Source: Selaginella moellendorffii (Eukaryota; Plantae; Lycopodiophyta). Taken from it: a stretch of DNA of 64,000 nt. A program made the translations under genes and the position numbers. The notes under the pieces are model-generated. The model made no database searches and had not been told where the DNA came from. It was given only the letters and a program-made list of their open reading frames with translations. How positions within the stretch are numbered: the stretch's first letter is position 1; each line of letters starts with the position of its first letter. This document shows, piece after piece, positions 8,687-28,265 of this stretch. The stretch is taken from positions 1 through 64,000 of the forward strand of contig NW_003314343.1 in NCBI RefSeq assembly GCF_000143415.4, read 5' to 3'.

Positions 8687-8689
8687 ATT

Positions 8690-8701
8690 TGGTATCGGAG
8701 C
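8690..8701 (+). promoter_or_regulatory. Primer-binding site, tRNA-iMet type
   Basis: TGGTATCGGAGC 3 nt after the LTR (canonical TGGTATCAGAGC). Confidence 0.9.
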
Positions 8702-8745
8702 CTTTTCCTCAGTTCTAGCGAAGGATAGAGGCGGATTGCTGGGAG

Positions 8746-11700
8746 ATGGCAAGGGCAAGGCGTAAGCGAACCCAGGCGGAGACGGAACCTCCGCCAGAGC
8801 TGGAGCCTCCGGTCGAACAAGAGGCTATGGATGAGGAATCCTTGCATGAGGAGGACTCCAGTGAGGAAACTTCCAAACAGGAGTCCGGTGGCGAGGTTCG
8901 GTCGTCCAAAGCTCGATTGGACGTGCTAGAAGGACAGTTGGCACAGACCAATGCCCTGCTGGAGACTCTCGTACGCAAGCTAAAGCGTGACGAGAAGCGG
9001 AAGAAAAAGCGAAAGACTGCGGACGCTGGCAGCGCAGAAGGTGCGGACCCTTCGGCAGGGACTGAGGCAAAACCAGACAAGGTCGAACAGACCGAAGTGG
9101 AATCAGTCCCTCAGGCAGTTCCCAAGTACAAACCAAAGCCCCCACCGGTGTTCAAGAGAGTGAACGACTATAAGGTTGTGGAGGATTGGTTTTACGATAT
9201 GGAGGACTACTTCCGAGCGTTGCGGTTACCAAGCTCGGAGAAGGTCCCATGTGCAAAACCATACTTGGCAGATAATGCCAAGTCTTGGTGGAGAACGACG
9301 GAGGCCAACGAAGGACCGGTGGCCACCTGGGACATGATGAAGGCGAGGATCCGCGCAACATACGTTCCTCCGAATGCCACTCTGCATCTGAGGGATGAAC
9401 TAAGTAGGCTGAAGCAGACTAGAACCATCCAGGAATATGTGAATGTGTTCATGGCAAAGGGGATACTTGTCACGGACATGGGGGATATGGATGCGTTCCA
9501 TGCCTTCATATTAGGTTTGCAAACCTGGGCTCGCGGTGAGGTGATGCGCTGGAACCCGACCAACTACAAGGAAGCGTTGGATGCGGCCATCAAGGTGCAT
9601 TTCAACAATAACCTGCGAAAGGGGAACACGACGGGGTCGGGATCCACGTTTAGTAAAGGGGCCAAACCAAGGGGAATGTATAGCAGGGGGAAATTCAAGA
9701 AGAGTTTCTCTAAGAATGAGTCCTCGGGGTTCCGGAAAGGCAAATCCGGTGGCCAGCAAGCAAGTACGTGGGGGAGTCAAGCGAAAAAAGACAAACCCAC
9801 GGATAAGAAGGTCAAGTCGTATAGCAGCGTGGGAAACAACGTATGCTACAACTGCGGCGAAGCGGGACACTTCTCGAGGGAATGTCCCTACCCGAAGAAG
9901 GCCAGAGCCAATATGGCCATCAAGTCGGGTGAAGTCCAAACTGAGGTATGTGATCCAGCCCCTAACTCAAAGTTACTCATTACACGAGCAACTTTGGTAG
10001 AGAGTCGTTCGCGACATCTACTAGCCCTCCGAGGGAAGCTCGGAGGTAGCTTTGTTAAGATCCTTATTGACACGGGTGCTTCGGATAATTTTGTGGCTGC
10101 AGACATAGTCCGGCAAGCCGGACTAACGGTGCAGCGGCTAGGCGAACCAAGGACTATAGAGTTTGTTCAAGGTAGCCAAAGCACCGATGAGGTACTTCGA
10201 CAAGCGAGAGTCGAAGTGGGGACATGGAAAGTGGACATGGATTTCACCGTCTTGGACATGGCAGGATTTGACGTGATCTTCGGAATGGATTGGTTTAATC
10301 GGTTCGTGGTAGCCCTGCATGGACAAGGTAGGAACCTTGTGGTATTAGCGAATGCCCAAGGAAGAAGATCTAGGGTGGAGGCCCAGGATCTAAAGGTAGG
10401 GCAAAGCAAGGCCAAAGAGTCATGCTTAAACCTGGTGTCCACAAGAGGACAACTCACTAAGAAGGTCAAGTCGTATAGCTGCATGGGAAACAACGTATGC
10501 TACAACTGCGGTGAAGCGGGACACTTTTCGAGGGAATGTCCCTACCCGAAGAAGGCCAGAGCTAATATGGCCATCAAGTCGGGTGAAGTCCAAAACGAGG
10601 TATGTGATCCAGTCCCTAACTCAAAGTTACTCATTACACGAGCAACTTTGGTAGAGAGTCGTTCGCAACATCTACTAGCCCTTCGAGGGAAGCTCGGAGG
10701 TAGCTTTGTTAAAATCCTTATTGACACAGGTGCTTCGGATAATTTTGTGGCTGCAGACATAGTCCGGCAAGCCGGACTAACGGTGCAGCGGCAAGGCGAA
10801 CCAAGGACTATAGAGTTTGTTCAAGGTAGCCAAAGCACCGATGAGGTACTTCGACAAGCGAGAGTCAAAGTAGGGACATGGAAAGTAGACATGGACTTCA
10901 CCGTGTTGGACATGGCAGGATTTGACGTGATCTTCGGAATGGATTGATTCAATCGGTTCGTGGTAGCCCTACATGGATAAGGTAGGAACCTTGTGGTACT
11001 GGCGAATGCCCAAGGAAGAAGATCTAGGGTGGAGGCCTAGGATCTAAAGGTAGGGCAAAGCAAGGCCAAAGAATCCTGCTTAAACCTGGTGTCCACGAGA
11101 GGACAACTCACTAAAGGAACTAAGGCAGCCTTTTTGTGCTTACTCTCGGTGAAGAGTGACAAAAAGACAGGAACGGAAGAAGTACCTTTAGTGATCCAGC
11201 GGGTGTTGGAAAAATTCCAGGATACCATGCCGGAGGAGCTACCGGCGGGATTGCCCCCCGCACGACCGATAGAACATAAGATTGAGCTGGTCGAGGGCGC
11301 TGAAGCGGTGGTTCGTCCACCCTATCGTTTGAACGAAAAAGAACTCAAGGAGCTCAAGTGCCAACTAGAGGAGTTGGTGGACAAAGGGTATGTTAGGTTG
11401 AGCAAGTCGCCGTATGGAGCACCGGTATTATTTGTGAAAAAGAAAGATGGATCTATGCGCATGTGCATAGATTACCGGTTGCTCAACAAGTATACCAAGA
11501 AAAACAAGTACCCTTTGCCAAGGATTGAGGACCTGTTCGATAGGTTGGGAAAGGAAAAATACTTCTTGAGGATTGACCTCAGGTCAGGATACTACCAGAT
11601 CAGGGTAGCTGAGGAGAATGTCGAGAAGACAACCTGTCGAACGAGGTATGGGAGCTTTGAGTTTCTGGTGATGCCCTTTGGGCTGTGCAATGCGTCGGCA

Positions 11701-14172
11701 ACGTTTTCGGCGTTGATGAACCACATCTTTGTACCTTATCTGCATCACTTCGTGGTCGTCTATATCGACGACATCCTGATCTATAGCGAGACGCTAGAGG
11801 AGCATGCCGAACACTTGGCGAAGGTGTTTGAGAAACTAAGGGAACACAAACTGTATGCTAAAGACAGCAAATGTGACTTTGCTCAACAAGAGGTAAAGTT
11901 TCTCGGGCATGTGGTGGGCCAGGATGGGCTCAAGGTGGACCCGGAGAAGGTCCAAGCGATCCAGGAATGGGAGCGACCTTCGAATGTACATGAGTTGAGG
12001 GCGTTCTTGGGGCTATGCAACTACTATCGAAAGTTTATCAGACACTATTCGAGAGTAGCTCTGCCCTTAATGGACCAAACAGGAAAAGGGAAGATGGTAT
12101 GGACAGCGGAATGCGAGGCGGCATTCGTCCACCTCAAAGGGAAGTTGAGGAAGGCTCCGGTGTTGGCATTACCAGACTTTGGTAAGGACTTTGAGGTAGA
12201 CACAGATGCTTCGGACTTTGCGTTGGGCGCAGTTTTGAAGCAAGACAACCATCCAGTAGCGTTCTTCTCGAAGAAGCTGGACAAGGCTCAACAGAAGTGG
12301 CCTGCCCATGAGAAGGAATTGTTTGCGGTGGTCAAGGCGCTCAAGGAGTGGCGACACTACCTTGGGAGACACTTCAAGGTTTACACGGATAATGTGGCAA
12401 CGAAACACTTCTTGTCACAACCCGACCTGAGAGGGAAACAAGGTTGGTGGGCCAATGCCTTGGCCAAGTTTGATTGCGAGATTCTGTACAAGCCTAGGAA
12501 GAGCAACATCGTGGCAGATGCGCTAAGTCGAAAAGCAAGCTTGAGGTTGGTGATCTCCAGCGCAACAGCAACCTTCTGGGACGATGTGCGGACAGCATAT
12601 GAGAACGATGGTCTAGCACAAGAAGTGTTGTTGAGGAATCTGGAGGCGCGGGAAGCTCACCAGAGAGCTGAGCTGCCGACGGAAGAGAAAACGGGCTATG
12701 CGGAACGCAACGGACTCATATATTACAAGCAAACGAGGGTGTATGTTCCAGAAGGGGAACTAAGGAAGGTAGCCTTGGAAGAGTGTCATGACGGACCTCT
12801 CGCGGGACACGGCGGAGTGCCTAAGACGATGGGCTTACTCAAAAGGAAGTATCATTGGCCAGATATGGCTAAGGACGTCCAAGACTATGTAAAGACATAT
12901 CCAACATGTCAGCAAGTCAAAGCCGTGACGAAGGCTAGTGGGGGCTTGTTGCAAAGCATCCCCGTTCCAGATCGTCCGTGGAAATGTCTCACGATGGACT
13001 TCATCACGGGACTACCCCCAAGCGAGGGGTTCGATGCGATATTTGTGGTGGTGGACCGATTTTCAAAAATGGCACATTTCATACCCACCACAACGGAAGT
13101 GGATGGGGAAGGTGTGGCGAAGCTGTTCTTCGAACAAGTGGTTCGAGTGCGGGGAAGGCCGGAAGAGATTATCTCAGATCGAGATAAGATCTTCACCAGT
13201 AGGTTCTGGAGGACACTCCTAGAACAGTATCGCACCAAGTTGAAATTCAGCACAGCCTATCACCCACAGACAGGTAATGGGTATTAAGTCAAGATTGATG
13301 GCACTAACACTTCTTGACAGACGGACAAACGGAAAGGGTGAATAGGCAGCTGGAGGATTATTTGCGATGCTATGTCTCGGGAGAGCAGACCGACTGGGTA
13401 AGTCATTTGGGACTTGCGGAAATGTGTTACAACAACTCACCACATTCGAGCATCGGGGTGAGTCCATGGGAAGTCATCAATGGGCGAGCTATTGAAGGTC
13501 CTGTGGAACTCGGCGTGGCCGAGTATCATGGAGAGTTACCCGCAGTGGAGGCATTCACGGCGGAAAGACTCAACATTTGGAATCTAGTGAGGGATTCCTT
13601 GGAACGGGCTCAACAAAGGCAAACTAAGTACGCGAACCAAAAGCGTCGGGATGTGGAGTTCCAAGCTGGGGAAAAGGTGTGGCTGAACACCAAGAACCTT
13701 AGGCTACCAAGTGGGATCAGCCGGAAGTTGACCCAAAGGTAAAAATGCATGTATTCCTGTAAATGAATTGATCTTGAGTTCCTTAAGCAGGTTCGCGGGG
13801 CCTTACGAGATTGAGGCTCGAATCGGTAAAGTGGCTTACCATCTCTGACTTCCTCGAGAGATGGGGAAGATGCATCCCGTGTTCCACATGAACTTACTCA
13901 AGCTGTATTTTGAGGATCCGCTTCGCAAGGACCAAGTAAGACCTTTACCTGATGTTATCCAAGGGGAGGAGGAATACGAAGTCGAGGCCATCCTCAATGC
14001 GCGCAAGAGCAAGCGACAAGGACGCGAGGTGAGAGAGTTCCATGTGAAGTGGAAAGGATTTCCACACTACGAAGCAACATGGGAACCGGAGGAGAACCTA
14101 GCGAACGCGCGAGATCTAGTGGAGGAATTTTTGCATGGCAGAACTCTATGTACTTATGCAAAGTTCAATTAA
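8746..14172 (+). pseudogene. Single-frame gag-pol (gag, CCHC knuckle, aspartic protease, RT, RNase H, integrase, chromodomain) with a 654-bp duplication, 3 stops and two putative introns (13274-13320, 13739-13790)
   Basis: [73 protein letters not shown]; 8746 and 11089 are in the same frame. Confidence 0.93.
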
Positions 14173-14576
14173 AAGTATCAATTTGAGAAGTTGAGCAATG
14201 GCATATGTTGGGACCTGAAGGCGCGCCGAAGGTAAGCTAATTAGCATGGGTTAGCTAGGTCAACCAGGCGTAGGGAGCTACGCCCGACTCCCTGCGGGGA
14301 TGTCGAATCCGTAGACATATTCTATGGAGGTTGGGTTCGAGTCCCAACCCCCTAGTAAAGCAAGGCTGGGTTCAAGTCCCGACCCTATACTAGGGCGTGA
14401 TAAGGTGGGGAGTATAGGGACACCTATATTCCGTTGTCATGAGCTCTTGGCAGGGGAGGCTAACTTAGGCACACCGCTAACTGGGGGGATGCCCCCGGAG
14501 ACATGGTCAACAAGTCGTAGGATCAAAAGAGAGACGTTCGATGTGGGTATCGAACTTCTTCTATGGGTGGTAGAGT

Positions 14577-15733
14577 TGTAAGGAACCAACTCGCCGAGGT
14601 ATCGTAGGCTAAAGGAACCCCGAAAGCATGACCAAAATGACAAAGAGTTCATCGGATGGGACCAAGTCGAAGATCGAGTCCAAGACCGACTCTAGGACCG
14701 AGTTCGAGATAGAGTCCGGAATCGAGTCCGAGACCGACTCGGGGACCGAGTTCGAGTCCGAGTTCGAGACCGAGTTCGAGACGGAGCCCGAGATCCGAAA
14801 TCGGGTCCGAGACCGAGTCCGAGGTCGAGTCCGAGGTCGGGTCCGAGATCGGGTCCGAGATCGAGTCTGAGATCAAGTCCGAGACCGAATCCGAAGTCGG
14901 ATCCGAAATCGGGTCCGAGATCGAGCCAGAGACTAAGTCCAAATACTAATACGGGTCAAGGGGTGAAAGCCCAAAGCGTGCGTCTCCCAGGGGGGGGGGG
15001 CTGCAAGGGGTTCCAAAAGTATAGTAGGGATAGTGAGGTCCAGGAACCAGTTTTGAAGGGACTCTCCAGTTGGGCTTCCAAACTGACTTGAGGTTGAGAC
15101 TGGGACCGAGGGGCCTTGGGTGGGAGTGAGCATAGACTTGGCTGGTGCCGGAGGGGCCATCCAAGGAAGTGCTCAAGAGCAGCTCCCACTCCCGAAAGGG
15201 AAACCGATTGCGGTGCTCCCGGCTCATGTGGAGTGGTGCCCCACTTGAGTACCATGCGGCTCATTGGTCCTCGCCCTTCCTAGGGGCTTGGGCCTTCCTT
15301 CGGGATGGAAGTGGGGGGGTAGAGGTACCCATACCGGGCCGCTAGGCCACAGTGTTTCGCCCCGGCATCCCAAAACAAGTGTTGCACTCAAGATTTGGGA
15401 TTTAGAGGGTCCCATGATCAAGTCTTGTGGTACCCAAGGATGTTAGGAACCTGGAAGCTTGGTGTGCTTGGTTGCTTGTGCTTGCGGGGAGTGTAGCCGA
15501 ACCTTAAATTCAGTCTAACCCGGGGAGGGGGATTGGGAGAGATTGGGAATCTGTGGATGGATGGCTAACGCTCCGTTGCTCGTGCAATGAGTAGCTGAAA
15601 CCAAGTAGAACCAAGTAGGAGTTGGTACCATAGGCGAGAACCTTGGCGAGGGAACTTAGCAAAAGCCAAGGCAGTGTCGGACGGATAGACGAGGTAAGCT
15701 GGCAAATGGGAAAGGAAAAATTTGTGGCTTACA
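14577..15733 (+). repeat. 3' LTR (1157 bp), preceded by a purine-rich tract GGGTGGTAGAG
   Basis: Same termini and sequence as the 5' LTR; length difference lies mainly in the hexamer array. Confidence 0.96.
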
Positions 15734-16045
15734 CCATGTCCCTATAATGAGTAACTTTAAGCTAGGGACTGGATCATGTACCTTAGTTTGGTTTTTGCTC
15801 GACTTCATGGCCATATTGACTATGGCCTTTTTTGGGTAGGGACATTGTCTTAAAAAGTGTCCTGCTTCATTGTAATTAAAGCATATGTTGTTTCCCACGC
15901 TACTAGCTGATTTGACCTTCTTATCCATGGGTTTTTCCTTTTTGCCTAACTCTCCCACATATTTGCTCGTTGGCCACTGGATCTACCTTTCCAAAACCCT
16001 GAAGACTCATTCTTAGAGAAACTCTTCTTGAATTTCCCTTTGCAA
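15734..16045 (-). mobile_element. gag end/zinc-knuckle portion of the older interrupted gypsy copy
   Basis: KKVKSASSVGNNICFNYNEAGHFLRQCPYPKK, homologous to 9800-9990. Confidence 0.88.
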
Positions 16046-16059
16046 GAATGCATTGTAAC

Positions 16060-16400
16060 TTCTCAACCTGCTTCTCCGCTTGCTACTTGCATTGCTAGCA
16101 TATCGGGCAAGCACGAACATAGTCTGTAACATCACCTTCCATACAAGACCAAAAGAACCCCTTTTGTAACGAGGCAAGAGTCTTTCACTTGCCTCCATGC
16201 CCAATTGCTAGTACATCATGATGTTCCCACAGAAATATCCATTACAAATCCTTTGTGGGTAAATACAACCTCTCTTGTTTATAATATATAAGCCCATCTT
16301 TGACTGAGAAATAAAACTTTGCATTAGCATAATGTGCAACTTTTGTTGTATCACTACCATGAGTCTTCTTCACCAATTCCATATGTTCTCTTCACAGCCT
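16060..16400 (-). pseudogene. Gypsy integrase Zn-binding (HHCC) fragment of a different family
   Basis: Minus-strand reading DGLIYYKQERLYLP..EHHDVLAIGHGG..FFW..DVTDYVRACPIC with stops. Confidence 0.7.
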
Positions 16401-16669
16401 GCAAATCATCCTTGTAAGATGTTTAGATATCTTCCAACCAATCCAAGGTTACAGTTGAGATTGCCTGAAACTGCAAATGAAAGCTCAAGATTGTGAGCTT
16501 GATGCGACAGCCTCTAGAAGCTTTGATGTAAGTGCCACTTCAAAGATTGTCTTCTTTGCTAATGTTGCTTCTCTATGAGGGCCAGGAAGCTGCAAGTGTT
16601 GGGTTGTAGACCGTGGCACACCATGGTGTGCAGCAGCTAGCATGAATCACTAGTGTGGTTTAGGGAGTT

Positions 16670-16830
16670 TGTGTTGGGCCATGGCTATGCTCCGGTGACA
16701 ATGTCAGCTTTGGGCAAGGTGGCAAACAATGCATTGATGTGCTCCACACTCCCTACTTGCACATACCCCACCAGCAATGCATTCCATGACACGAGTGAAT
16801 CAATTGGAAAGATCAGGCTATTGAGTTGGT
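16670..16830 (-). pseudogene. PPR (PLS-class) gene fragment
   Basis: Minus-strand reading LVSWNALLVGYVQVGSVE..LFATLPKADIV then a stop. Confidence 0.55.
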
Positions 16831-19800
16831 GTTGCTCTAGTAATGCAGATTTCTAAGATGGAAATTGAGCTTCTTATTTATTTCTATTTTAGTAAATATT
16901 TTATAATTATTTAATACTAAAAAGTAGTGTTTGTTTGTAATTCAAATATGTATAGTATATGACCGAGATGAGAATACATTATATATAATATACTTTTATA
17001 GTTTATCAAAAGACTACTTTAAGGGGGCCAATGGGTTTCTTATGGGTCATATAGTTGTTGTTATAGTTAAAACTTAGAGCATACAAAAACTAAGAATTTT
17101 AATTTTTATAACTAAAAGTATAAGTTCTAATTATAAAATAATTTATAAAAATAAAATATGACCCATAATTAATAGCAAATAAATGTTTAACAAAATTAAA
17201 GACATTTGACACTCATAGCATACGTTAATGATTTATTTATTTATAAGTAAGTTGATACACCACATTATAATCGTAATTTGTAATGAACTTATCAAAGATA
17301 TATACCAATCACCTCAAATGAAACCAAATAAAAACACACTAATTTTTTTAAAGCGCTATGTTAAATATCTTAATATAAAAATTATAAAACATAATGTAAT
17401 TTTTATGTATTGTTTTGATAATATAACATTTTAGAATATGAAAACCCCATAAATATCTCTTTTCCTTTACCCACATCTTTAATAAGTTCTTTAATAGTTG
17501 GTATAATTGTGTTTTGTCTAAACTCAATTGTAAAAACCCCTTCATAATACTTATCAATACAAAAATAATAATTTATAATTATAATTAATACAAATAATAA
17601 ATAAAATAATCTTAAAATGCTTTAGTTTCTATTATGGCAACATGGTTGAACAGGACTGGCATTTGGAATTTTATTCCTTCAATCCCTTGCTATGACAGGT
17701 GGCTATATAGAATAAAGAAAACTGGTCAATGTAAGAAATACATCTTATTCTTGCTTGTTAGCACAAAACGTAACAAGGTTCTTATTTTTGGAATGATGCT
17801 CAGCGACAGCTTCCTTGTAAAGATAATAATCCCATTATAAGACCACAACCCATCAACAAAATTCAATAGCTCTAACATGTGACCCTGCTACTCTCTTCCT
17901 CCTTTTTCTTGTCTTTCTTCTCATACTCCCCATCTTTGTCTTTGGTTTCTTCCTCTGGTGCTAGTTTCCCCCTCTTAAGTGGCTTCCTCAAGTCAGAATT
18001 GCTCTTCACCTCTGTCAGCTCCATATCATAGACATCAAGTTTGCTATAGCAGCTATGAGTGATGACTTCCCAGCCCATATTCAAGTTCCTTGAGATCAAA
18101 CCAAGCTCATGGGGTTTCTTCACAACAAACAGTAGCGATTTAGAACAATAATTCATTCCCTGAGGTAAATTATCATCCTCCAAAAGCTTTGGTGACTGGA
18201 ACTCATAGAGCTTTGGGATTCTTTCTGGCAAGCTTCCTTGCTGTTTCTTGATCTTTTGATTCAAGGTAGTAGTGGGGAACAAGAAAGTGCCAGATCTTTC
18301 AGATCAATCCCAGCCATGAAAGAATCTAGGTCCTAAATAACCTTGTTCTTGAACCTGGGATCCAGCTTGAGAAAGTGAAGGCATGCTTGAAAGCCATTGA
18401 CTTCTATATATTGTTCCTGTAAACCCACTCATCTTGTTGTACACTTTAATATAAACTTAAAAAGATAATAAATATTTAGAAAAAGATTTATTTACATCAC
18501 TGTATCAATTATTTTTAAATATTAAATAATATTACAATAAATATTATATCTTATATATAGAAGTTCTATATGCTTAAATTAATAAAATTTTGATATTCAC
18601 ATCCAATATTTTAATTTATTCCAATAAGTATTTAAAATATTAATGAGTTTTGAAATATGCTAATAGTTATAGTATTAAATAAATTATAAGTTACTATTTA
18701 CCCAGTACTAATTCAATATTGTATTATTTTTTAGTTTAGATCTCATATTACCCATGTATCTTTCCAATATAAATTGTAATACCATATAACATTGTAATTT
18801 TTTTCATTAATTACAAGATTATCATCCTTTCACATACGAATGAAGACATTCAGTAACCTTCCTTGATATTTCAGTTTTCCCATATCAAAACCTTTCCAGA
18901 ATAAAGAACTAAAGTACAGTCTAATTGCATATATAAAGTATATATTTGATTTGGTATCTCATTTCTTAAGTCAAGAAAAATATAAAAAATTTGGTCCACT
19001 TTTTATGTAGGTTTTATAAATTAAAAAATATTTCCTTTTATCTAACAAATATATAAAAAAAATTGTTGGTTTAATACATATTCAATATCATTATCTATTA
19101 TATATGATATAGAGTATCTACCTTCTATATATTCTACTGATCCATATGTTACTAGATCATTTTCAACATGGAGTTCAAGCATTAATTAAGCTTCTCTTTG
19201 GAGTGACTTACCTGTATTTGATAAAATAAGAAAGTAATTGTATTACAATATGTTATAAAATATTTTTGTGAATATTAAGAAAAATAGTATGATATTCTAG
19301 AATATAAAAACCCCATAAATTCCTCTTTACTTTTATCTATAATAAGTTAATTAATAATTGGTATATTTGTGTTTTGTCTAAACTCAATTTTAATGACCGG
19401 GCTATATCAAATGGATTAAATAAAATTATACAAAGAGATGTGATAATTTTAATTTTAACAGTAAGCACTCTTAATATCCAAAATCTACAAAATACCTTTA
19501 TGTTACTTTAACTATTACTAATGTTATGGTAATCTAACTTTTAATCTTCAATCCAATTAAGGGAGCTAGTCAATCACATGGCTCATTTGTCAACTTAATT
19601 CTGGAATGGAGGTAGATAAGGAGCTCAAGTTCCAATCATTCACACTAGCAAGGAGAAACAAAATTCAAAGCATTTTTTGATTTGATTAGATTCTGGTCAA
19701 GGCACCAAAATATAAGCAAGACTGCATTTGTACCTTCTTACTGAGACTGTCAGTCAATGTGACACTTGAGAAGAAAAGTACATACATAGCCCAAGAAAAA

Positions 19801-19964
19801 CAAAACCTTTGTGGAAAAACTTCTACCCGTCATCGACCTGTTGTGAATGATGTTAAACTTGCATAGCAGACAATTCTCAACCACTTGTCTATGCAAGAAC
19901 AGTGGAAGTGGTGATTGCATGGTGGTCCATGGAAAATAATAAAAGTTTTTTCTGATATGAAGCC

Positions 19965-21197
19965 TTACCGCATCTTCCGAAGAGAACTCGCTCACGACGT
20001 CTTGATGATGATCAGCACGGTCTTTTTCGGCGATGGAGCCAGCTGCGTCATCATCGCTCCATTATATATACTCATCGTTCTGGATCCTCCAGGCCAGAGG
20101 CTTGCACGAAACCATTTGCTCAAACGTTTTCTTCTTCACACAGTTTCAGCAGAAAGGCTTCCACTGTCGTGCCTAGTCCAAACGCTACAAGAGCTCCACA
20201 CTGGCATGGATCTCCGCCACCTTTTGCCGCTCGTCTTCAAGCACAAAGAGACACGCCGTGCACGACATGTTTCCACACGTGTCAAGAACGTGTCAAGTTT
20301 GAGCTCCAAAGCTTGATCCGAACTCGAGACAGGCATCCAACAAAGTTGTGAAAGCTAAACAATGGACATATCAATTATAACAATTAGGGAACCATAATAG
20401 ACAGCGATATTCGTGGATATGGCTCGAGGTACGAGAGATCTACGCACCTTCGCAGCAAAGAACTCCTCACCGACTGGAAGCTGTGAGCCAGGCGATTGCG
20501 GTGGTGCCTCACACCAATCTCTCGCGGATCGTCCAGCTCGCGACATATCAGCATTCCCACCTCACCAGCTCGGTCCGCCATCTCCGCCAAGAGCAGCAGT
20601 TCATTGTCGAGGTTGATCGCCCAAGAGCAGTAGCTGGATCATCGTGTCGCGCAGCCGATCGCCCAAGAGCTCCTGAAAGACGAGATCTTTCCACTGGGAG
20701 AGGAGTCCATTGCCATCGCCATCGCTGGAAGGATCGAGCTTGAGGTAGAGCCTGGAGCACGGCACAGCGATGGTAGCGCACGCGAGGGAGTGGTAGTGTG
20801 GCGGCGGCGACGGTGGCCGCGATTGATCGAGTGGCACCGCCGAGGGAGAAAACGATCGATCGAGGAGTGCCAGGGATTAGGAGATCTAGGAGCCGCGGAT
20901 GCGGCGGAAGAGGAGGAAGGCCTTCGAGAGATGGAATGTGAGATGCGTCTTGATCTCCGCCACCGCGGATGCCAGCGCCATGGTGATGGGCTTGAAGAGT
21001 GCACGATCGTCCAGGCGGAGGAGGGAGTAGAGCTCGCGCTGGAAACCTGGAAGTGATCGAAGAGGGATTGTGACGAGCTGCTCGGCTTCCTCGTCCCGGG
21101 GGTTCTCCTCGGCGATTGTGATGCTGTAGCCCAGCTCCATGGGCTGCCAGATGTCCTCTTCCGCTCCTACAATGATGCCAGGAATCTTCATTTCCAA
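19965..21197 (-). pseudogene. Disrupted coding-like sequence of unknown family
   Basis: GC-rich island with ATG at 21197 and broken ORFs (20886-21197, 20601-20837); no recognisable motif. Confidence 0.3.
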
Positions 21198-21537
21198 GGG
21201 TCAACTAAACAGTTAAAAAGCAACGAACATTCTAACTAATAAGCTATACTTTAATATTTTAATATAAATTAAAATAAATTGCTGCGTGTTGCATTGCAGC
21301 AATGTTTAGTTCGCTTTTGTATTTAAATATTTTCTATTATTATATATAATTTATTGTGATTTGTCCAATAGCTATACCTGCTTTTGTATATATTATATCT
21401 TTGATCCATATATGATCTATTATTTTTTATAGTGTGTGTTGTCTGCTATTATTTGTTTATAACCTTCTTTCTCCATTATTATTTTTAATGGGTTTACTTC
21501 TTCACTGTGATAGTCTATCAAAGGGGACGACTGAGAA

Positions 21538-24156
21538 ATGGCGGCTGCATCGGCGCCCCATTCGAATTCCCGACTGGGCATTGTCGAGGACATGGCGAAG
21601 CTGGGCGTCTCATTAGGCTTGAAAGCTAGGCTTTGCATCCGGCAGTGCACCCTCCTGAGCAAGGCGATGGTGGAGGTGAGTGATCTGGTGAGGGAATGTG
21701 TGCTCTTCATCACTGCAGCCATTGAGGAGGAGCTGCTTGCCGCGATGAGAAACGGGGTGGAGCTCATCCGATCTTGCAAGACAAAAGGGACCTGGTGGAG
21801 AGGGCGGATCTCTGTGGGTTGGGTCATCACAGCTCTGCTTCATGAGGAGAGACGGTCAGAGTTTGTGGAGGCTTACGACGCACTGCTGGAAGCTGCTCGA
21901 ATCGCAATCTCCCCCTCTGTGGCAAAGCACGGTTACACCTCATCAAGTGCGAAGATCATCATCGGGCGACTGATGTCTGCTCAAGAATTGCTGAGCAACG
22001 AGGCGGACGCAGACAGAGATGAGCTCGTGAGATTGATACGTGACAGTTTGATTCTTCCCAGAGGACTGAAGCTCCTACGCAGCAGGCTAGTCGGTGCTTA
22101 CCCTCAAAACCATCTGCTGGCTAGTGAAGACATCGAACGGGGTCAGGTGCTTGGCCAGGGTGCCTACGGCTGTGTTTACGAAGCCAAGTTTCTTGGAATC
22201 CCGTGTGCTGCTGTCAAGGATATCATTGTCGCCAGAAGCCCCGGATCGGTTCACGATCAGGATCATCTTCCATTCGAGATCCAGGCTCATCTCACTGTGA
22301 AGCATTCAAGCATCGTTAGCGTTCTGGGATATTACAGTACCACTCGCAGCAGCAGATCCTCAGGCAAGCATCAGCAGCAGCAGCAGATCTATTCGCTGCT
22401 GATGGAGAGGATGGATAGGAACTTGACCGAGCTCATAGAAGAAGAAACCAAAACGTTGAACTCGTCGTCCACATCAACGTCGTCGACGACGACCCCGCCA
22501 TTTGCAATGCGAGAATCACTGTCCATCATGCTGCAAGTCGCCGCCGCTATGGAGCTCCTGCACTCCAAAGACATGATTCACAGAGATCTCAAGACGGACA
22601 ACATACTCGTACGCCAGCACCGGGACATCGTCCGGGTGAAGGTTGCCGACCTAGGGCTGGCCTGCGTCCACCTTGGAGGCCTCCACACCGACAGGCGTGG
22701 TACCAAGAACTTCATGGCACCTGAAGTGTACGCGTCCGAGACGTACTCGAAGAAGGCGGACGTCTACAGCTTCGCCATGGTGTGCTATCACGTACTCACC
22801 GGAACGCTGCCGTTCGCGGACGTCCTACGCAAACCCATGCACGAGTTCTTCGCCATGGTTTCTAAAGAAAAGAGGCGGCCTGTGATTCCCGGGAACTGGC
22901 CGATCGACTTGGTGGAGCTTGTGACGTCCTGTTGGAGGCATGAGCCGGAAGAACGTCCGACGTTCGCCATGGTTACGGAGAGATTGAAGCTGATACGTGC
23001 GTCCGTGGCTACCAACATCAGCGTCGAGGAGGTAACGCTGTTCTTGAAGCAGGAGGAAGAAGTTTTTCCTTTTGTGGAGGAAAACGTTTTGCCAGCGAAT
23101 ACAACAGCTTCGTTGGCCCAGTCTGATCATCAATCGAGTTTCGTGGATGACATTATCACCCGGCTGATCGAGGTTCGCAATGGCCGCCCCGCATGCCAGG
23201 TGCAGTTAGCTGAGTCCGAGATCCGGAAGCTTTGCCTATGTGCGAAGGAGATTTTCCTGTCGCAGCCGAACTTGCTCGAGCTGGAAGGGCCAGTCACGAT
23301 TTGCGGTGCGGTTTAAGGCTTTGATTTATCTTCTGATTTTGGAAATTTTGTTTTTCTTGTGTAGGTGATATTCATGGGCAGTATTGGGATTTACTCACAA
23401 TCTTTCAGGATGGCGGGTTTCCTCCACTGACGAATTATCTCTTCCTCGGTAACTATGTTGATCTTGGCAAGCAGAGCATCGAGACGATCTGCTTACTCCT
23501 TGCTTACAAGATCAAGTATCCAGAACTGTTCTTCTTACTTCGGGGAAGCCATGAATGCGCATCCGTGAACAGAATCTTTGGCTTCTACGACGAGTGTAAG
23601 AGGAGATACAACGTTCGATTGTGGTTGACGTTTACAGACTGTTTCAGCACCTTACCATTCTGCGCCCTGATCGACGATAAAGTCCTCTGCATGCACGGGG
23701 GACTGTCGCCGGACCTGAAATCTCTGGATATGATCAGGGAAATCGCTCGACCGACTGATATTCCGGATGCTGGACTAGTTTGTGATCTTGTCTGGGCTGA
23801 TCCTGATAAGGAAATCAGAGGATGGGGTATGAACAATGAGCATAGTTACAGATTTGGAGCTGATGTAGTTGCGGAGTTTTTACAAAAGCACGACTTGGAT
23901 CTCATCTGCCGAGCTCATCAGGTACGTAGAAACACCAGCCGGATTCGAAGCTGCTGATTGAATCTCTATTTTTTTTTGTTCCTGACTTGATATTCTTCAG
24001 GTTGTGGAGGATGGATATGAGTTTTTTGCAAGTCGGGGGCTTGTGACATTGTTCTCGGCCCCAAAGTTTGCCGGCAATGCTGGGGCCGTGATGTGTGTGG
24101 ATGAGCAACTCATATGCAGCTTTAAGATTTTTAAGCACGGAAAAACACGGGTATGA
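21538..24156 (+). CDS. Fusion protein (~826 aa): MLKL/MCAfunc-like helical N-domain + TKL/Raf-like protein kinase + degenerate PP1 phosphatase domain; exons 21538-23305, 23365-23921, 24001-24156
   Basis: Kinase [32 protein letters not shown]1 [35 protein letters not shown] introns of 59 and 79 nt keep frame (2481 nt); no stops. Confidence 0.9.
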
Positions 24157-25681
24157 GTTATTGTTTCAGAGGTACGATTTTGTTTGGATAGATACTACAA
24201 TGCTCAGAAACTAACATTCTTGCTGCTCAGCTTTTTTCATTTCGACTTCACAGGACGAACCCCTGCTGAACTTATTCAGATAGTGGGCAGAAAACACTTA
24301 GTTTTACAAACGCCTTACACCTCAGACTCCAAATGCACGCAAGCAGCAGCAGCTCATGAGGTTGAAACTCGGCGTCTGCTAGAAACCGTTCCACATCCTC
24401 AGCGAAGAGGCCACCAACAAGTACGTTCCGCTAGTCATCAGATTCGTGACGCGAGGCAGAAAAACGGCGACACAAGGCTTGCAAGCGGCACAGTACCAAA
24501 ACCAAAGTCGGTTTCATACAGCGGGAAACGATTCCAGCTTGTGATCGTAAAGTCGGATTCAGCATCGCAGGGACACACCAACGGCAGTCCAATGCACAGG
24601 AAAAAGAAATCGATTCCCAAATTTTAGGGCGTTTTGGGTATTTTTCAGAATTTCATTTTTGTCGGGACGGTATATTCTGGTGTATTCTGGTATATTCTAA
24701 TTATTCTAATTAAATTCTGGTATATTCTAATTATATACCAGTGTAGTAAAATCATTAGTAGCTTCCAAAGAGTTCCAAAACCCCCTCAAAGCCGAAGATA
24801 TTCTGGGCTTGCCAAAGCAAGTCAACTAGAACTCCACAAAAAAATTACCAGATTCGAAAACTAAAAATGCCCAAAACAGACGCATGTAAAGCAGATCTAG
24901 AGTCCAGAAAACGAGAAACAGAAGGCTAGGAGATAGGGTGTAACCGCAGTTTTCCATGACTGTCATTTGCTAATGTGAGGGCAGATCCTACAAAATCCAC
25001 AATAATGAGCTGCATACCAGAAAGTTGCATATGTCCAGAATAAAAAAAACACCAGTAGTTCCCAAAACAGCCCAAAACCCCCTCAAACCTGAAACCTTTC
25101 AGCCTTTCAGACACAAGTTTACCAAAACTCCATTGAAAAATCATGAAACCTAGGGGAAACCAATTTGTATTCATCTTCCCTCAGTACATCCTATCCAAAA
25201 CTGAAACCACCTTTACTGACTGATCAAACACTGATTCATCAAGCTCCCAATTAATCTATGAGTACTCAGACACTGATTTATTAAAATTAATCTGTTGGAT
25301 GCATGAGTACTCTCCCCAATTAATCTATTGGATGCATGAGAGTGCTCACCTTGATGTATTCAGATCATATACCCTGAATTTATATTATTAAAAAAAATTT
25401 CAAAGATAAGTATATAATGCCTACAATGCATTTCCACCATAGAAATATGCAATCCATCTCCAACACAAATTGAATTATTCCAAGTATATTTTGTTTTAGG
25501 GTTAAAGTTTTCTTATCTTCTGCCCACTGGAATAGATTCTTTGAAAATTGTTTTTGATGTCAAAGAAGGGAAATGTTGTGACATACAGCTTCCTGCAACT
25601 ATGAAAGGGCTTCTACGGCTTTTTATTCACCTCACCCTCAGTTTCACTTGGGCATTCACACATTCTTGAACTACTGTTGGA

Positions 25682-27823
25682 TGTAAGCCACAAATTTTCC
25701 TTTCCAATTTGCCAGCTTACCTCGTCTACCCGTCCAACACCGCCTTGGCTTTTGCTAAGTTCCCTTGCCAAGGTTCTCGCCTATGGTACTAGCTCCTACT
25801 TGGTCTCAGCTACTCACTGCACGAGCAACGGAGTGTTAGCCATCCATCCACAGATTCCCAAATCACTCCCAATCCCCCTCCCCGGGTTAGACTGGATTTA
25901 AGGTTCGGCTACACTCCCCGCAAGCACAAGCAGCCAAGCACACCAAGCTTCCAGGTTCCTAACATCCTTTGGTACCACAAGACTTGATCATGGGACCCTC
26001 TAAATCCCAAGTCTTGAGTGCAACACTTGCTTCCGGACGGCGGGGCGAAACACCGTGGCCTAGCGGCCCGGTATGGGTACCTCTCGCCCCCCACTTCCAT
26101 CCCGAAGGAAGGCCCAAGCCCCTAGGAAGGGCGAGGACCAATGAGCCGCATGGTACTCAAGTGGGGCACCACTCCACATGAGCCGGGAGCACCACAATCG
26201 GTTTCCCTTTCGGGAGTTGGAGCTGCTCTTGAGCACTTCCTTGGATGGCCCCTCCGGCACCAACCAAGTCCATGCTCACTCCCACCCAAGGCCCCTCGGT
26301 CCCAGTCCCAACCTCAAGTCAGTTTGGGAGCCCCACTGGAGAGTCCCTTCTAAACTGGTTCCTGGACCTCACTATCCCTACTATACTTTTGGAACCCCCT
26401 GCAGCCCCCCCCCCCCCCCCCCTGGGAGACGCACGCTTTGGGCTTTCACCCCTTGACCCGTATTAGTATTTGGATTTAGTCTCTGGCTCGATCTTGGACC
26501 TGATTTCGGATCCGACTTCGGATTCAGTTTCGGACTCGATCTCGGACTCGATCTCGGACCCGATCTCGGACCCGACCTCGGACTCGACCTCGGACTCGGT
26601 CTCGGACCCGATTTCGGATCTTGGACTCCGTCTCGAACTCGGTCTCGAACTCGGACTCGAACTCGGTCCCCGAGTCAGTCTCGGACTTGATTCTGGACTC
26701 GATCTCGAACTCGGTCCTAGAGTCGGTCTTGGACTCGATCTTCGACTTGGTCCCATCCGATGAACTCTTTGTCATTTTGGTCATGCTTTTGGGGTTCCTT
26801 TAGCCTACGACACCTCGGCGAGTTGGTTCCTTACAACTCCACCACCCATAGAAGAAGTTCGATGCCCACATCGAACATCTCGTTTTATCCTACGACTTGT
26901 TGACCATGTCTCCTGGGGCATCCCCCCACTTAGCGGTGTGCCTAAGTTAGCTTCCCCGGCCAAGAGCCCATGACAACGGAATATAGGTGTCCCTATACTC
27001 CTCACCTCACCACGCCCTAGTATAGGGTTGGGACTTGAACCCAGCCTTGCTTTACTAGGGGGTTGGGACTCGAACCCAACCTCCGTAGAATACGTCTACG
27101 GATTCGACATCCCCGCAGGTAGTCGGGCGCCTTCCTCAAATTCCCTTTGAGGTGGACGAATGCCGCCTCGCATTCCGCTGTCCATACCATCTTCCCTTTT
27201 CCTGTTTGGTCCGTTAAGGGCAGAGCTACTCTCGAATAGTGTCTGATAAACTTTCAATAGTAGTTGCATAGCCCCAAGAACGCCCTCAACTCATGTACAT
27301 TCGAAGGTCGCTCCCATTCCTGGATCGCTTGGACCTTCTCCGGGTCCACCTTGAGCCCGTCCTGGCCTACCACATGCCCGAGAAACTTTACCTCTTGTTG
27401 AGCAAAGTCACATTTGCTCTCCTTAGCATACAGTTTGTGTTCCCTTAGTTTCTCAAACACTTTCGCCAAGTGTTCGGCATGCTCCTCTAGCGTCTCGCTA
27501 TAGATCAGGATATCGTCGATATAGACGACCACGAAGTGATCTAGATAGGGTACAAAGATGTAGTTCATCAATGCCGAAAACGTTGCCGGCGCATTGCACA
27601 GCCCAAAGGGCATCACCAGAAACTCAAAGCTCCCATACCTCGTTCGACAGGTTGTCTTCTCGACATCTTCCTCAGCTACCCTGATCTGGTAGTATCCTGA
27701 CCTTAGGTCAATCCTCGAGAAGTATTTTGCCTTTCCCAACCTATCGAACAGGTCCTCGATCCTTGGCAAAGAGTACTTGTTCTTCTTGGTATACTTGTTG
27801 AGCAACCGGTAGTCTATGCACAT
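25682..27823 (-). mobile_element. Deleted copy of the gypsy family: 3' LTR (25682-26835), 3' UTR (to ~27130) joined directly to an RT fragment
   Basis: Reverse complement of the LTR; RT motifs in ORF 27254-27934; cut at 27823 by the DNA transposon end. Confidence 0.93.
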
Positions 27824-28265
27824 AAGCTCTATTTCGTTAAAGTGGGAATTGTCATTATCCCACTTGTAAAATAAGGTTTCCAAACCTTTATATAGTATAT
27901 AAATATAACAAAATTCAACTGCATTGAGGCACATGCCATTTTATTTTAAACAAGGAAATGTCTACTCAATCACTTCTCCTCCCCCTGCCACTGCTTCACC
28001 TCTCTCTTCTCCTTGTCATCGTCGTCCAATTTCTTTTCATCCTTTTAATATTGGCTCAGTTGCTCCGAGTCTAGGTGGAGCCCAAGTCCCCATTCAATCT
28101 TTACTTTCCCCTTATTAATAAAACAACTTCATAGACTTCCAATAACATGCTGTAACACTTCTAGTATAATGCAAATCCTCTCAAAGAATTGTCTTTTAAT
28201 ATTAATACAATGGCATGGAACCCCATGCCATAATAAGTTACATTTTTAAATAAATACATGCCATC

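What the first reader, a model, noticed from the sequence alone, without database searches (positions are those of the whole stretch)
21538..24156. Intact MLKL-like/kinase/pseudo-PP1 fusion gene: candidate integrated-decoy immune or cell-death protein
Seen: an uninterrupted three-exon frame in otherwise decayed surroundings. The kinase keeps its G-loop, VAxK lysine, HRDLKxxN, DLG and APE. The PP1 domain is well conserved overall but altered specifically at active-site positions: GDYVDRG to GNYVDLG (23451, 23463), GNHE to GSHE (23547), the NDRG arginine lost (NNEHS), and SAPNYCGEFDNAG to [10 protein letters not shown] (shortened beta12-beta13 inhibitor-binding loop). These are established metal- and phosphate-binding residues, so the domain should be inactive. 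The N-terminal ~130 aa (..[28 protein letters not shown]) resembles MLKL/MCAfunc four-helix bundles. Intron positions match plant PP1 genes while the kinase part is intronless, suggesting a DNA-level fusion. Inference: executor + kinase + decoy that senses PP1-targeting effectors or RVxF partners.
Basis: partly seen in the sequence, partly recalled or inferred. Interest (0 to 1): 0.85.

Follow-up and report, generated by a model that had tools for sequence, protein, structure and literature searches.

The report
Spikemoss MLKL-like kinase fused to dead PP1
The spikemoss Selaginella moellendorffii transcribes one gene that joins a cell-death-type helical bundle, a working-looking kinase and a phosphatase (PP1) domain with a broken catalytic centre. 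The design is real and unmatched elsewhere, but the PP1 part is changing so fast that a bait or decoy role remains unproven.

Summary
Window 21538-24156 (+) is Selaginella moellendorffii LOC9630262. My three-exon CDS equals RefSeq isoform X1 (826 aa).

- **Transcript:** Spliced ~3.0-kb contigs from three studies carry N-terminus, kinase and PP1 on one RNA. They also show a third intron in the 3'UTR.
- **Kinase:** All catalytic motifs are present.
- **PP1 part:** It is 75% identical to a consensus of 82 canonical PP1s. It carries D92N, R96L, N124S, R221E, Y272F and a shortened beta12-beta13 loop. The RVxF docking groove is kept.
- **Origin:** PP1 introns sit where moss and Amborella PP1 genes have them, so the fusion arose at DNA level.
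- **N-terminus:** It matches plant MLKL-type (DUF1221) N-termini by profile-profile comparison (96% probability, E 3e-9). It models as a four-helix bundle plus brace.
- **Uniqueness:** No comparable fusion was found among 5.8 billion proteins.

The decoy reading is untested and weakened. Against a ~2% diverged relative, pN/pS is about 1 overall and about 2 in PP1. Eight of 13 PP1 differences are losses of canonical residues in this lineage. The relative still has the full loop.

Earlier notes of this scan report other MLKL-like fusions elsewhere in this genome. I class this as a new variant of plant MLKL-like kinase fusion proteins, with function open.

The parts
21483..21537 (+). 5'UTR (the transcript contigs start at 21483, 21500 and 21511)
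   Evidence: table 8
21538..22128 (+). N-terminal MLKL/DUF1221-type helical domain plus brace (aa 1-197)
   Evidence: hhalign of A1 against A4 gives probability 96.1%, E 3.2e-9, 172 columns. The AF2 model has long helices at 34-57, 60-82, 103-131 and 135-171, then 174-187. Q36, C80, D159 and L163 are conserved across the family alignment.
22129..23007 (+). Protein kinase domain (aa 198-490) with G-loop, AAVK lysine, [11 protein letters not shown] and APE. It contains a Ser/Thr/Gln-rich insert at about aa 276-325.
23008..23142 (+). Linker (aa 491-535) between the kinase and PP1, inside the same exon and ORF
   Evidence: The relative's contigs break here, at 23069-23128.
23143..23305 (+). PP1 N-terminal part (STPPase_N, aa 536-583, and the start of the catalytic domain). 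Exon 1 ends inside the Gly codon of ICG|DIHGQ.
23306..23364 (+). Intron 1 (59 nt, GT..AG), at the same place as in Sphagnum and Amborella PP1 genes
23365..23921 (+). Exon 2: PP1 catalytic core with D92N (23451), R96L (23463), N124S (23547) and D220N/R221E/G222H plus a 1-aa deletion (about 23832-23843)
23596..23647 (+). Alternative 52-nt intron of RefSeq isoform X2 (P0001). It causes a frameshift and truncates PP1. It was not seen in the RNA contigs.
   Evidence: Coordinates were read.
23922..24000 (+). Intron 2 (79 nt, GT..AG) between RAHQ and VVEDG, the canonical PP1 intron place
24001..24156 (+). Exon 3 coding part: N271K, Y272F, C273A, a three-residue deletion in the beta12-beta13 loop, RVxF-groove strand LICSF, stop TGA at 24154-24156
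24172..24230 (+). Intron 3 (59 nt, GT..AG) in the 3'UTR, 15 nt after the stop
24231..24700 (+). 3'UTR exon (contigs run to at least 24631-24700)

Best explanation
This is a genuine, transcribed, lineage-restricted chimeric gene of Selaginella. An intronless MLKL-type gene (N-terminal four-helix bundle, brace and a kinase with every catalytic motif) became joined in frame, at DNA level, to a duplicated genomic copy of a PP1 catalytic-subunit gene with its introns.

The PP1 moiety is very probably a pseudophosphatase. Three of its metal or phosphate ligands (D92, R96, N124) are replaced, R221 is lost, and the inhibitor-binding loop is altered. The fold-defining residues and the RVxF docking groove persist.

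Inferred mechanism: the dead PP1 serves as a docking or bait module. It brings RVxF-type partners (host PP1 regulators, or pathogen proteins that mimic them) to the kinase and helical-bundle part. That part then signals, or possibly permeabilises membranes, as MLKL-type proteins do.

What is shown: architecture, transcription, splicing, origin and residue changes. What is inferred: loss of phosphatase activity, kinase activity, partner docking and any immune output. My sub-confidences are about 0.95 for architecture and transcript, about 0.8 for dead PP1, and about 0.3 for a selected docking or bait role.
For: - The CDS equals RefSeq isoform X1.
- One spliced ~3.0-kb contig with no mismatches appears in each of three studies and spans all domains.
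- Pfam finds Pkinase, STPPase_N and Metallophos.
- Kinase motifs are intact.
- PP1 matches solved PP1 structures at E 1e-145 to 1e-152 but reads GNYVDLG, GSHE, NNEH and [10 protein letters not shown].
- 26 of 175 invariant columns are changed, with enrichment at the catalytic core, p = 0.012.
- RVxF-groove residues D240, L243, F257, R261, V264, L289, C291 and F293 are kept, and I169 is V.
- Introns 1 and 2 lie at canonical PP1 positions. A paralog's N-terminus plus kinase is one ORF.
- The N-terminus links to DUF1221-type MLKL N-termini and models as a four-helix bundle.
- The relative shares N and L at the D92 and R96 positions, so inactivation predates the split.
- Literature: an oomycete effector docks on plant PP1c through KVTF, and a phosphatase-dead PP1c blunts it (PMC4740116). 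Pm13 is an MLKL_NTD plus active-kinase resistance protein (PMC10951266). The AtMLKL HeLo domain plus brace causes cell death (10.1101/681015).
Against: - pN/pS against the relative is about 1.08 overall, 2.1 in PP1 and 1.7 in the N-terminus. Only the kinase is lower, at 0.42. None of these differs significantly from 1.
- Eight of 13 PP1 amino-acid differences are losses of near-invariant canonical residues in the window lineage (R74T, L75I, Y78D, K150L, N157S, I169V and others). The loop deletion is also window-specific.
- The PP1 branch is about 20 times longer than the median canonical branch.
- Retention of the RVxF groove is not more than expected for invariant columns.
- No ortholog exists outside the close relative.
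- No biochemical data exist.
- The AF2 N-terminal model is only moderately confident (pLDDT 65). Its alignment included DUF1221 sequences, so it is not independent evidence.
Confidence: 0.45

Rival explanations
1. Young chimeric gene whose PP1 appendage has no selected function. After the fusion and the first inactivating change, the PP1 part drifts neutrally and is decaying. The protein works, if at all, only as an MLKL-like kinase, or the whole gene is on the way to becoming a pseudogene.
For: - pN/pS is about 1 overall and about 2 in PP1.
- Loss of canonical residues and the loop deletion are concentrated in the window lineage.
- The PP1 branch is very long.
- The gene is unique to this lineage.
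- It sits between retrotransposon copies.
- RefSeq also models a PP1-truncating isoform.
Against: - The 826-codon frame is intact, with three correctly spliced introns in three studies.
- Both longer indels against the relative are in frame, at 3 nt and 9 nt.
- 75% identity to the PP1 consensus and 149 of 175 invariant columns are retained.
- Changes are enriched at the catalytic core rather than spread evenly, p = 0.012.
- The kinase pN/pS is 0.42.
Confidence: 0.35
2. The PP1 domain is still an active or weakly active phosphatase. It acts in cis or in trans on the kinase activation loop, giving a self-resetting kinase-phosphatase switch.
For: D64, H66, D95, H125, H173 and H248 are kept. The fold is clearly PP1.
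Against: D92N removes the bridging metal ligand and N124S a metal-2 ligand. R96L and R221E remove both phosphate-binding arginines. Y272F and the shortened loop alter the active-site rim. From established PP1 and lambda-phosphatase mutagenesis, which I cite from my own knowledge, single changes at these residues reduce activity by orders of magnitude.
Confidence: 0.05
3. Annotation or assembly artefact: two neighbouring genes (a kinase and a PP1) wrongly merged, as in the older JGI model that called the PP1 part alone (SELMODRAFT_235294).
For: A separate 299-aa PP1-only model exists (P0242). Sporadic kinase-PP1 'fusions' in other plants, such as P0168, P0221 and P0222, may be merged models.
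Against: Exon 1 is one uninterrupted ORF from the start codon through the kinase into the first ~54 residues of PP1. Independent spliced contigs from three studies cover all of it with no mismatches.
Confidence: 0.02

Closest known systems
Pm13 (Aegilops longissima) and R3AK (wheat): MLKL-type four-helix bundle, brace and catalytically competent kinase, acting as resistance or helper proteins (PMC10951266; 10.64898/2026.08.07.743466)
   Same: An N-terminal MLKL-like helical bundle and brace are followed by a kinase that keeps all catalytic motifs. Both are classed as kinase fusion proteins.
   Different: They have no C-terminal PP1 or any third domain. They are Poaceae proteins of the MLKL_NTD cluster, whereas this N-terminus links to the DUF1221 side. 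The immune function is shown for them and is unknown here.
Arabidopsis AtMLKL1-3 (DUF1221 HeLo domain, brace, pseudokinase, Ser-rich tail; 10.1101/681015; PDB 6KA4, 6LBA)
   Same: The N-terminal region is homologous at profile level. It superposes on AtMLKL2 at Z 7.4, rmsd 3.6 A, over 134 residues with 18% identity. The kinase domains hit each other at E 1e-14 to 1e-19.
   Different: AtMLKLs are pseudokinases, while this kinase has every catalytic motif. The Pfam DUF1221 model itself does not hit this protein. The tail here is a PP1 domain. The family was described in seed plants only.
Selaginella paralogs P0002-P0009 (NCBI 'mixed lineage kinase domain-like'), which carry a C-terminal EDC4_C domain
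   Same: They share the N-terminal domain and kinase (28-33% identity over aa 21-499). The N-terminus plus kinase is intronless. A borrowed host domain sits at the C-terminus.
   Different: Their C-terminal module is an EDC4/VARICOSE end rather than PP1. They are tandemly repeated, whereas this gene is single.
Canonical PP1c/TOPP catalytic subunits (for example PDB 7n6g FAP15, 8pq7, 3e7a; Selaginella P0339 and P0340)
   Same: The full STPPase_N plus Metallophos fold is present, with 69-74% identity. Intron places are the same, and the RVxF groove is kept.
   Different: It carries D92N, R96L, N124S, R221E, Y272F, a shortened beta12-beta13 loop and a truncated C-terminal tail. It is fused behind a kinase. 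Its branch is about 20 times longer.
Kinase fusion proteins with integrated sensor domains in cereals (for example WTK4 with an HMA-like domain, 10.1101/2025.08.26.672365) and NLRs with integrated decoys (PMC9528084)
   Same: A signalling chassis carries a domain copied from a host protein that pathogens are known to target. PP1c is targeted by Pi04314 and RipAS (PMC4740116, PMC10273071).
   Different: No effector, no resistance phenotype and no evidence of selection for mimicry is known here. The plant is a lycophyte, and the integrated domain is a dead PP1, which I did not find described.
BSU1/BSL Kelch-PP1-like phosphatases (PDB 9tp7, hit at E 1.7e-60)
   Same: They are a plant-specific fusion of a PP1-like catalytic domain to another domain.
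   Different: BSLs are active phosphatases with an N-terminal Kelch domain and belong to a distinct PPP subfamily. Here the PP1 is a canonical-type PP1c that has lost catalytic residues.

Membership tests
Plant MLKL family (Mahdi et al., 10.1101/681015) | N-terminal HeLo/four-helix-bundle domain (Pfam DUF1221) | tested here: met
   Met at profile level only. hhalign of A1 against A4 gives probability 96.1%, E 3.2e-9. Bryophyte N-termini are hit by both the A1 and the DUF1221 profiles. The Pfam DUF1221 HMM does not hit directly, and A1 against DUF1221 alone was weak, at probability 6.9%. The AF2 model shows four long helices at pLDDT 65.
Plant MLKL family (Mahdi et al., 10.1101/681015) | Brace helices between the bundle and the kinase-like domain | tested here: met
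   Helices at 135-171 and 174-187 precede the kinase. D159 and L163 are invariant in all 21 aligned N-termini. The AtMLKL2 alignment covers chain residues 23-209.
Plant MLKL family (Mahdi et al., 10.1101/681015) | Pseudokinase lacking catalytic residues | tested here: not met
   [21 protein letters not shown] and APE are all present. In this respect it resembles Pm13 and R3AK.
Plant MLKL family (Mahdi et al., 10.1101/681015) | C-terminal serine-rich region without a known domain | tested here: not met
   The C-terminus is a complete PP1 domain.
PP1 catalytic subunit (PPP family), as an active enzyme | STPPase_N plus Metallophos fold with GDxHG | tested here: met
   Pfam E 4e-20 and 2.5e-36. 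GDIHGQ is present. PDB PP1 hits reach E 1e-152.
PP1 catalytic subunit (PPP family), as an active enzyme | GDxVDRG motif (D92 metal bridge, R96 phosphate binding) | tested here: not met
   It reads GNYVDLG. The relative shares this (contig 9).
PP1 catalytic subunit (PPP family), as an active enzyme | GNHE motif (N124 metal ligand, H125 general acid) | tested here: not met
   It reads GSHE. N124 is S and H125 is kept.
PP1 catalytic subunit (PPP family), as an active enzyme | R221, H248, Y272 and the beta12-beta13 loop | tested here: not met
   R221 is E, with a neighbouring one-residue deletion. H248 is kept. Y272 is F. Residues 275-277 are deleted.
PP1 catalytic subunit (PPP family), as an active enzyme | RVxF-binding groove | tested here: met
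   D240, L243, F257, R261, V264, L289, C291 and F293 are identical, and I169 is V. Binding itself was not tested.
Active eukaryotic protein kinase | G-loop, beta3 lysine, HRD, DFG and APE motifs | tested here: met
   DFG is DLG. Catalytic activity is not testable with these tools.
Integrated-decoy or sensor-domain immune receptors (NLR-ID, cereal KFPs) | Extra domain derived from a host protein that effectors target | tested here: inconclusive
   The domain is clearly PP1c-derived. PP1c is an effector target in Solanaceae (PMC4740116, PMC10273071). No pathogen or effector is known for Selaginella.
Integrated-decoy or sensor-domain immune receptors (NLR-ID, cereal KFPs) | Effector binding that triggers resistance or cell death | not testable with these tools
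   This needs binding and cell-death assays.
Integrated-decoy or sensor-domain immune receptors (NLR-ID, cereal KFPs) | Selection signature on the integrated domain (constraint or diversifying selection rather than drift) | tested here: inconclusive
   pN/pS in PP1 is 2.1 from 15 non-synonymous and 2 synonymous changes, not different from 1. There is one relative only, and 11 of its 51 differences were not listed.

The most novel reading that the evidence does not exclude
A lycophyte single-chain sensor-executor. An MLKL-type four-helix-bundle kinase uses an integrated, catalytically dead PP1c as bait for pathogen proteins that mimic RVxF regulatory subunits. On this reading the fast change in the PP1 part reflects an arms race rather than decay. 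The gene would be one member of a wider Selaginella repertoire of MLKL-kinase fusions carrying different borrowed host domains, such as the EDC4 end, forming a non-NLR intracellular surveillance system outside seed plants.
Probability: 0.2. Interest if true: 0.85.

Novelty: new variant of a known kind. Interest (0 to 1): 0.6.

Why it matters
MLKL-like proteins and kinase fusion proteins have only recently been recognised as plant immune components. The work so far is almost entirely in seed plants, and mostly in cereals.

This gene shows that a lycophyte builds the same chassis (helical bundle, brace, active-looking kinase) and has attached a copy of PP1c to it. PP1c is a hub phosphatase that pathogens hijack through RVxF mimicry, and here its catalytic centre is knocked out.

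If the dead PP1 is a bait, this would be a compact, directly testable sensor-executor in an early vascular plant, and a natural example of a PP1 pseudophosphatase. If it is merely decaying, it is a well-dated snapshot of how a chimeric gene is born, transcribed and loses one of its parts.

Both outcomes can be decided with simple assays and with sequencing of a few sister species.

Tried and rejected
1. **Pfam on the N-terminus alone.** No hit. The DUF6247 match at E 0.16 was dismissed.
2. **N-terminal profile A1 against the PDB.** Only chance G-alpha hits at E about 1.
3. **A1 against the 1.84 billion representatives.** Only the Selaginella family itself was found. The domain is therefore invisible to plain HMM search outside the genus.
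4. **hhalign of A1 against DUF1221 alone (A2).** Probability was 6.9%. The link became significant only through bryophyte intermediates.
5. **AF2 with the 8-sequence alignment.** pLDDT was 48.5 and the model was unusable.
6. **Fold searches with the better model.**
   - Foldseek gave no match at E <= 0.001.
   - VIA-align gave only generic four-helix bundles at Z up to about 10.
   - AtMLKL2 reached Z 7.4 and did not stand out.
   - The fold search therefore supports 'four-helix bundle', not 'MLKL' specifically.
7. **ESM Atlas look-alikes.** MCAfunc, DUF7792 and PUB10_N scored 0.75-0.79. The paralog's model matched RPW8-NLR at TM 0.52. I treat these as leads only.
8. **Fetching Selaginella PP1 loci for dS against the parent gene.** P0339, P0340, P0331 and P0242 are not on record. 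The age of the fusion could not be dated.
9. **ML tree of PP1.** The fusion's branch is too long to place and did not join the Selaginella PP1s.
10. **Search for an internal RVxF motif that might dock on the protein's own PP1.** None was found.
11. **Transposon capture.** I considered and rejected the idea that the flanking inverted repeats are transposon termini that captured the gene. They are parts of two Ty3/gypsy copies in opposite orientation.
12. **Two odd joints in the relative's contigs.**
   - One skips 620 nt at 21904-22525. The other skips 34 nt at 23094-23129, with 2 nt inserted.
   - Their short sides are only 27-30 nt, so I did not interpret them.
   - The second, if real, would shift the frame in the relative's linker.
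Full report
**What is there**

The window is from Selaginella moellendorffii. A search with exon 1 returned a 100% identical NCBI protein (P0001, isoform X2, 673 aa). Its cluster mate is P0121 (XP_024517226.1, 'uncharacterized protein LOC9630262 isoform X1', 826 aa). Joining 21538-23305, 23365-23921 and 24001-24156 gives a CDS whose translation is identical to P0121. Pfam finds three domains:
- Pkinase at aa 200-480, E 4e-42.
- STPPase_N at aa 536-583, E 4e-20.
- Metallophos in exon 2, E 2.5e-36.

Exon 1 is a single ORF. It runs from the start codon through the N-terminal domain, the kinase and a 45-residue linker into the first ~54 residues of PP1. The fusion is therefore written in the DNA. 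An older JGI model (P0242, SELMODRAFT_235294, 299 aa) called only the PP1 part.

**Transcription**

Three runs from three different studies each hold one ~3.0-kb contig. These contigs start at 21483, 21500 and 21511, and two of them run to the end of the stretch at 24700 (X5 ends at 24631). They have no mismatches and three GT..AG skips:
- 23306-23364, 59 nt.
- 23922-24000, 79 nt.
- 24172-24230, 59 nt.

The third intron lies in the 3'UTR, 15 nt after the stop codon. Precise intron removal shows that the contigs derive from spliced RNA. N-terminus, kinase and PP1 are therefore on one mRNA. The PP1-truncating 52-nt intron of RefSeq isoform X2 (23596-23647) was not seen, but contigs drop rare forms.

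**Kinase**

GQGAYG (206), AAVK (224), HRDLKTDN (348), DLG (371) and APE (394) are present. By sequence this is a competent Ser/Thr kinase. The Arabidopsis MLKLs are pseudokinases (10.1101/681015), whereas Pm13 has an active-type kinase like this one (PMC10951266).

**PP1 domain**

Against solved structures the domain matches PP1 at E 1e-145 to 1e-152. Against 82 canonical PP1s it is identical to the consensus at 221 of 294 columns. It differs at 26 of the 175 columns that are at least 97% invariant. In human PP1 numbering, the changes fall into two groups.

Changed:
- D92N and R96L (GDYVDRG reads GNYVDLG).
- N124S (GNHE reads GSHE).
- D220N, R221E and G222H, with V223 deleted.
- N271K, Y272F and C273A.
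- Deletion of residues 275-277 in the beta12-beta13 loop.

Kept: D64, H66, D95, H125, H173 and H248.

Five of the 11 catalytic-core residues are changed, against 21 of the other 164 invariant columns (Fisher p = 0.012). The RVxF docking groove is retained: D240, L243, F257, R261, V264, L289, C291 and F293 are identical, and I169 is V. That retention is no more than expected for invariant columns. From established PP1 enzymology, which I cite from my own knowledge, D92 bridges the two metals, N124 binds metal 2, and R96 and R221 hold the phosphate. Activity should therefore be lost. This is an inference and was not measured.

**Origin**

In the PP1 genes of Sphagnum magellanicum (L002) and Amborella (L003), exon boundaries fall at ICG|DIHGQ and at RAHQ|VVEDG. 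These are exactly the positions of introns 1 and 2 here. Sphagnum also has a third intron in the C-terminal tail. The paralog P0004 has its N-terminus plus kinase in one 547-codon ORF (L001 6001-7644). The gene therefore arose by joining an intronless MLKL-type kinase gene to a genomic, intron-bearing copy of a PP1 gene, close to the PP1 start codon.

In an ML tree the PP1 part sits on a branch of 1.78 changes per site, against a median of 0.09. It cannot be placed. I could not fetch Selaginella PP1 loci, so the fusion is not dated.

**N-terminal domain**

The first ~200 residues align from about residue 21-30 with Selaginella paralogs that NCBI names MLKL-like.
- A profile of this family finds nothing else among 1.84 billion representatives.
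- The same profile hits the N-termini of bryophyte kinases that had been collected only through their kinase domains. A DUF1221 (AtMLKL-type) profile hits the same proteins.
- Profile-profile comparison of the Selaginella family against bryophyte plus DUF1221 N-termini gives probability 96.1%, E 3.2e-9, over 172 columns (aa 15-190).
- Shared motifs are N..QC..L, E..V, C....W and D159...L163.

AF2 with the 21-sequence alignment gives pLDDT 65 and pTM 0.61. It shows long helices at 34-57, 60-82, 103-131 and 135-171, plus 174-187. Structure searches return generic up-down four-helix bundles at Z up to about 10. AtMLKL2 (6lba_A) comes in at Z 7.4, rmsd 3.6 A, 134 residues and 18% identity. 'Four-helix bundle plus brace' is thus supported. 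'MLKL-type' rests on the sequence profiles and the architecture, not on the fold search. The model is also not independent of the DUF1221 sequences in its alignment.

**Relatives and selection**

No other protein with this architecture and a related PP1 was found. The region search for long proteins returned only canonical PP1s and scattered, probably merged, gene models.

A fourth run, from a differently labelled organism, holds fragmentary contigs that are about 2% diverged. Its features are:
- The exon 1-exon 2 junction is present.
- N and L are kept at the D92 and R96 positions. Contig 9 has only four differences, none of them there.
- There is an in-frame 3-nt deletion at 23835.
- The sequence reads FAGEYDNAGA where the window has FAGNAGA. 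The loop deletion is therefore recent and specific to the window lineage.

Of the 40 listed substitutions, I counted 32 non-synonymous and 9 synonymous changes. pN/pS by region is:

| Region | pN/pS |
|---|---|
| Overall | 1.08 |
| N-terminus | 1.7 |
| Kinase | 0.42 |
| PP1 | 2.1 |

None of these differs significantly from 1. All are far from the strong constraint typical of PP1. I polarised the 13 PP1 amino-acid differences with the 82 canonical PP1s. In eight of them the window has lost the canonical residue that the relative still has (positions 552, 553, 601, 602, 605, 677, 684, 696). Only one or two changes go the other way.

Caveats: 11 of the 51 differences were not listed, there is only one relative, and the data come from contigs.

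**Reading**

The architecture, the transcript, the DNA-level origin and the residue changes are shown. The best mechanistic reading is an MLKL-type kinase with a dead PP1 used as a docking or bait module.

This is plausible because PP1c is docked by an oomycete effector through a KVTF motif. A phosphatase-dead PP1c titrates that effector (PMC4740116). RipAS also associates with a TOPP (PMC10273071). MLKL-type kinases act in resistance (PMC10951266; 10.64898/2026.08.07.743466).

They fit neutral decay of the PP1 part about as well as they fit an arms race. I therefore give the docking or bait function about 0.3 and the decay rival 0.35.

**Context**

The gene lies in a ~10-kb island between two 96%-identical copies of a Ty3/gypsy element in opposite orientation. 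Its paralogs carry a different borrowed C-terminal domain, EDC4_C, at 28-34 bits against a cut-off of 27. Earlier unchecked notes of this scan list further MLKL-like fusions elsewhere in this genome. No paper mentions this gene's identifiers.

**Verdict**

This is a real and unusual gene. I class it as a new variant of plant MLKL-like kinase fusion proteins, and its function is open.

Noticed in passing
window 7560-15722 (+) and 25692-27934 (-): Two copies of one Ty3/gypsy LTR retrotransposon lie in opposite orientation, with arms 92-96% complementary. They bracket the ~10-kb island that holds the gene. The left copy has long gag-protease and RT-RNaseH-integrase ORFs at 8746-10947 and 11089-13287.
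   Followed up: partly
L001 (GL377616.1 779208-799552), ORFs 6001-7644 and 12365-14152: There are tandem copies of the MLKL-like paralogs P0004 and P0006. Each has its N-terminus plus kinase in one ORF. Overlapping gene models span both copies. Several paralogs carry a C-terminal EDC4_C domain at or above the Pfam cut-off.
   Followed up: partly
window 22363-22512 (aa about 276-325): A low-complexity Ser/Thr/Gln-rich insert lies inside the kinase domain (..[13 protein letters not shown].. and ..[14 protein letters not shown]..). It recalls the Ser-rich tail of seed-plant MLKLs. Three of the relative's amino-acid differences fall in it.
   Followed up: no
window 23647: The relative has A instead of G here. 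This changes S684 to the canonical N. It also removes the AG acceptor of the PP1-truncating alternative intron used in RefSeq isoform X2.
   Followed up: no
window 26490-26764: About 16 overlapping copies of a 12-nt unit (GACTCGATCTCG-like) lie inside the right-hand retrotransposon copy.
   Followed up: no
window 16000-20000: An AT-rich block (29-33% GC) lies upstream of the gene. It has a pair of ~125-nt direct repeats 1.86 kb apart, at 17418-17538 and 19284-19398. Its nature is unknown.
   Followed up: no
window 37757-39439 (+): A 560-aa ORF carries DUF7869 (E 4e-42). It is probably part of the transposon noted by other first-stage findings on this window.
   Followed up: no
proteins P0168 (Erigeron), P0221 and P0222 (Malus): Other plant gene models combine a kinase with a canonical, apparently intact PP1. 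They may be merged neighbouring genes and were not examined.
   Followed up: no
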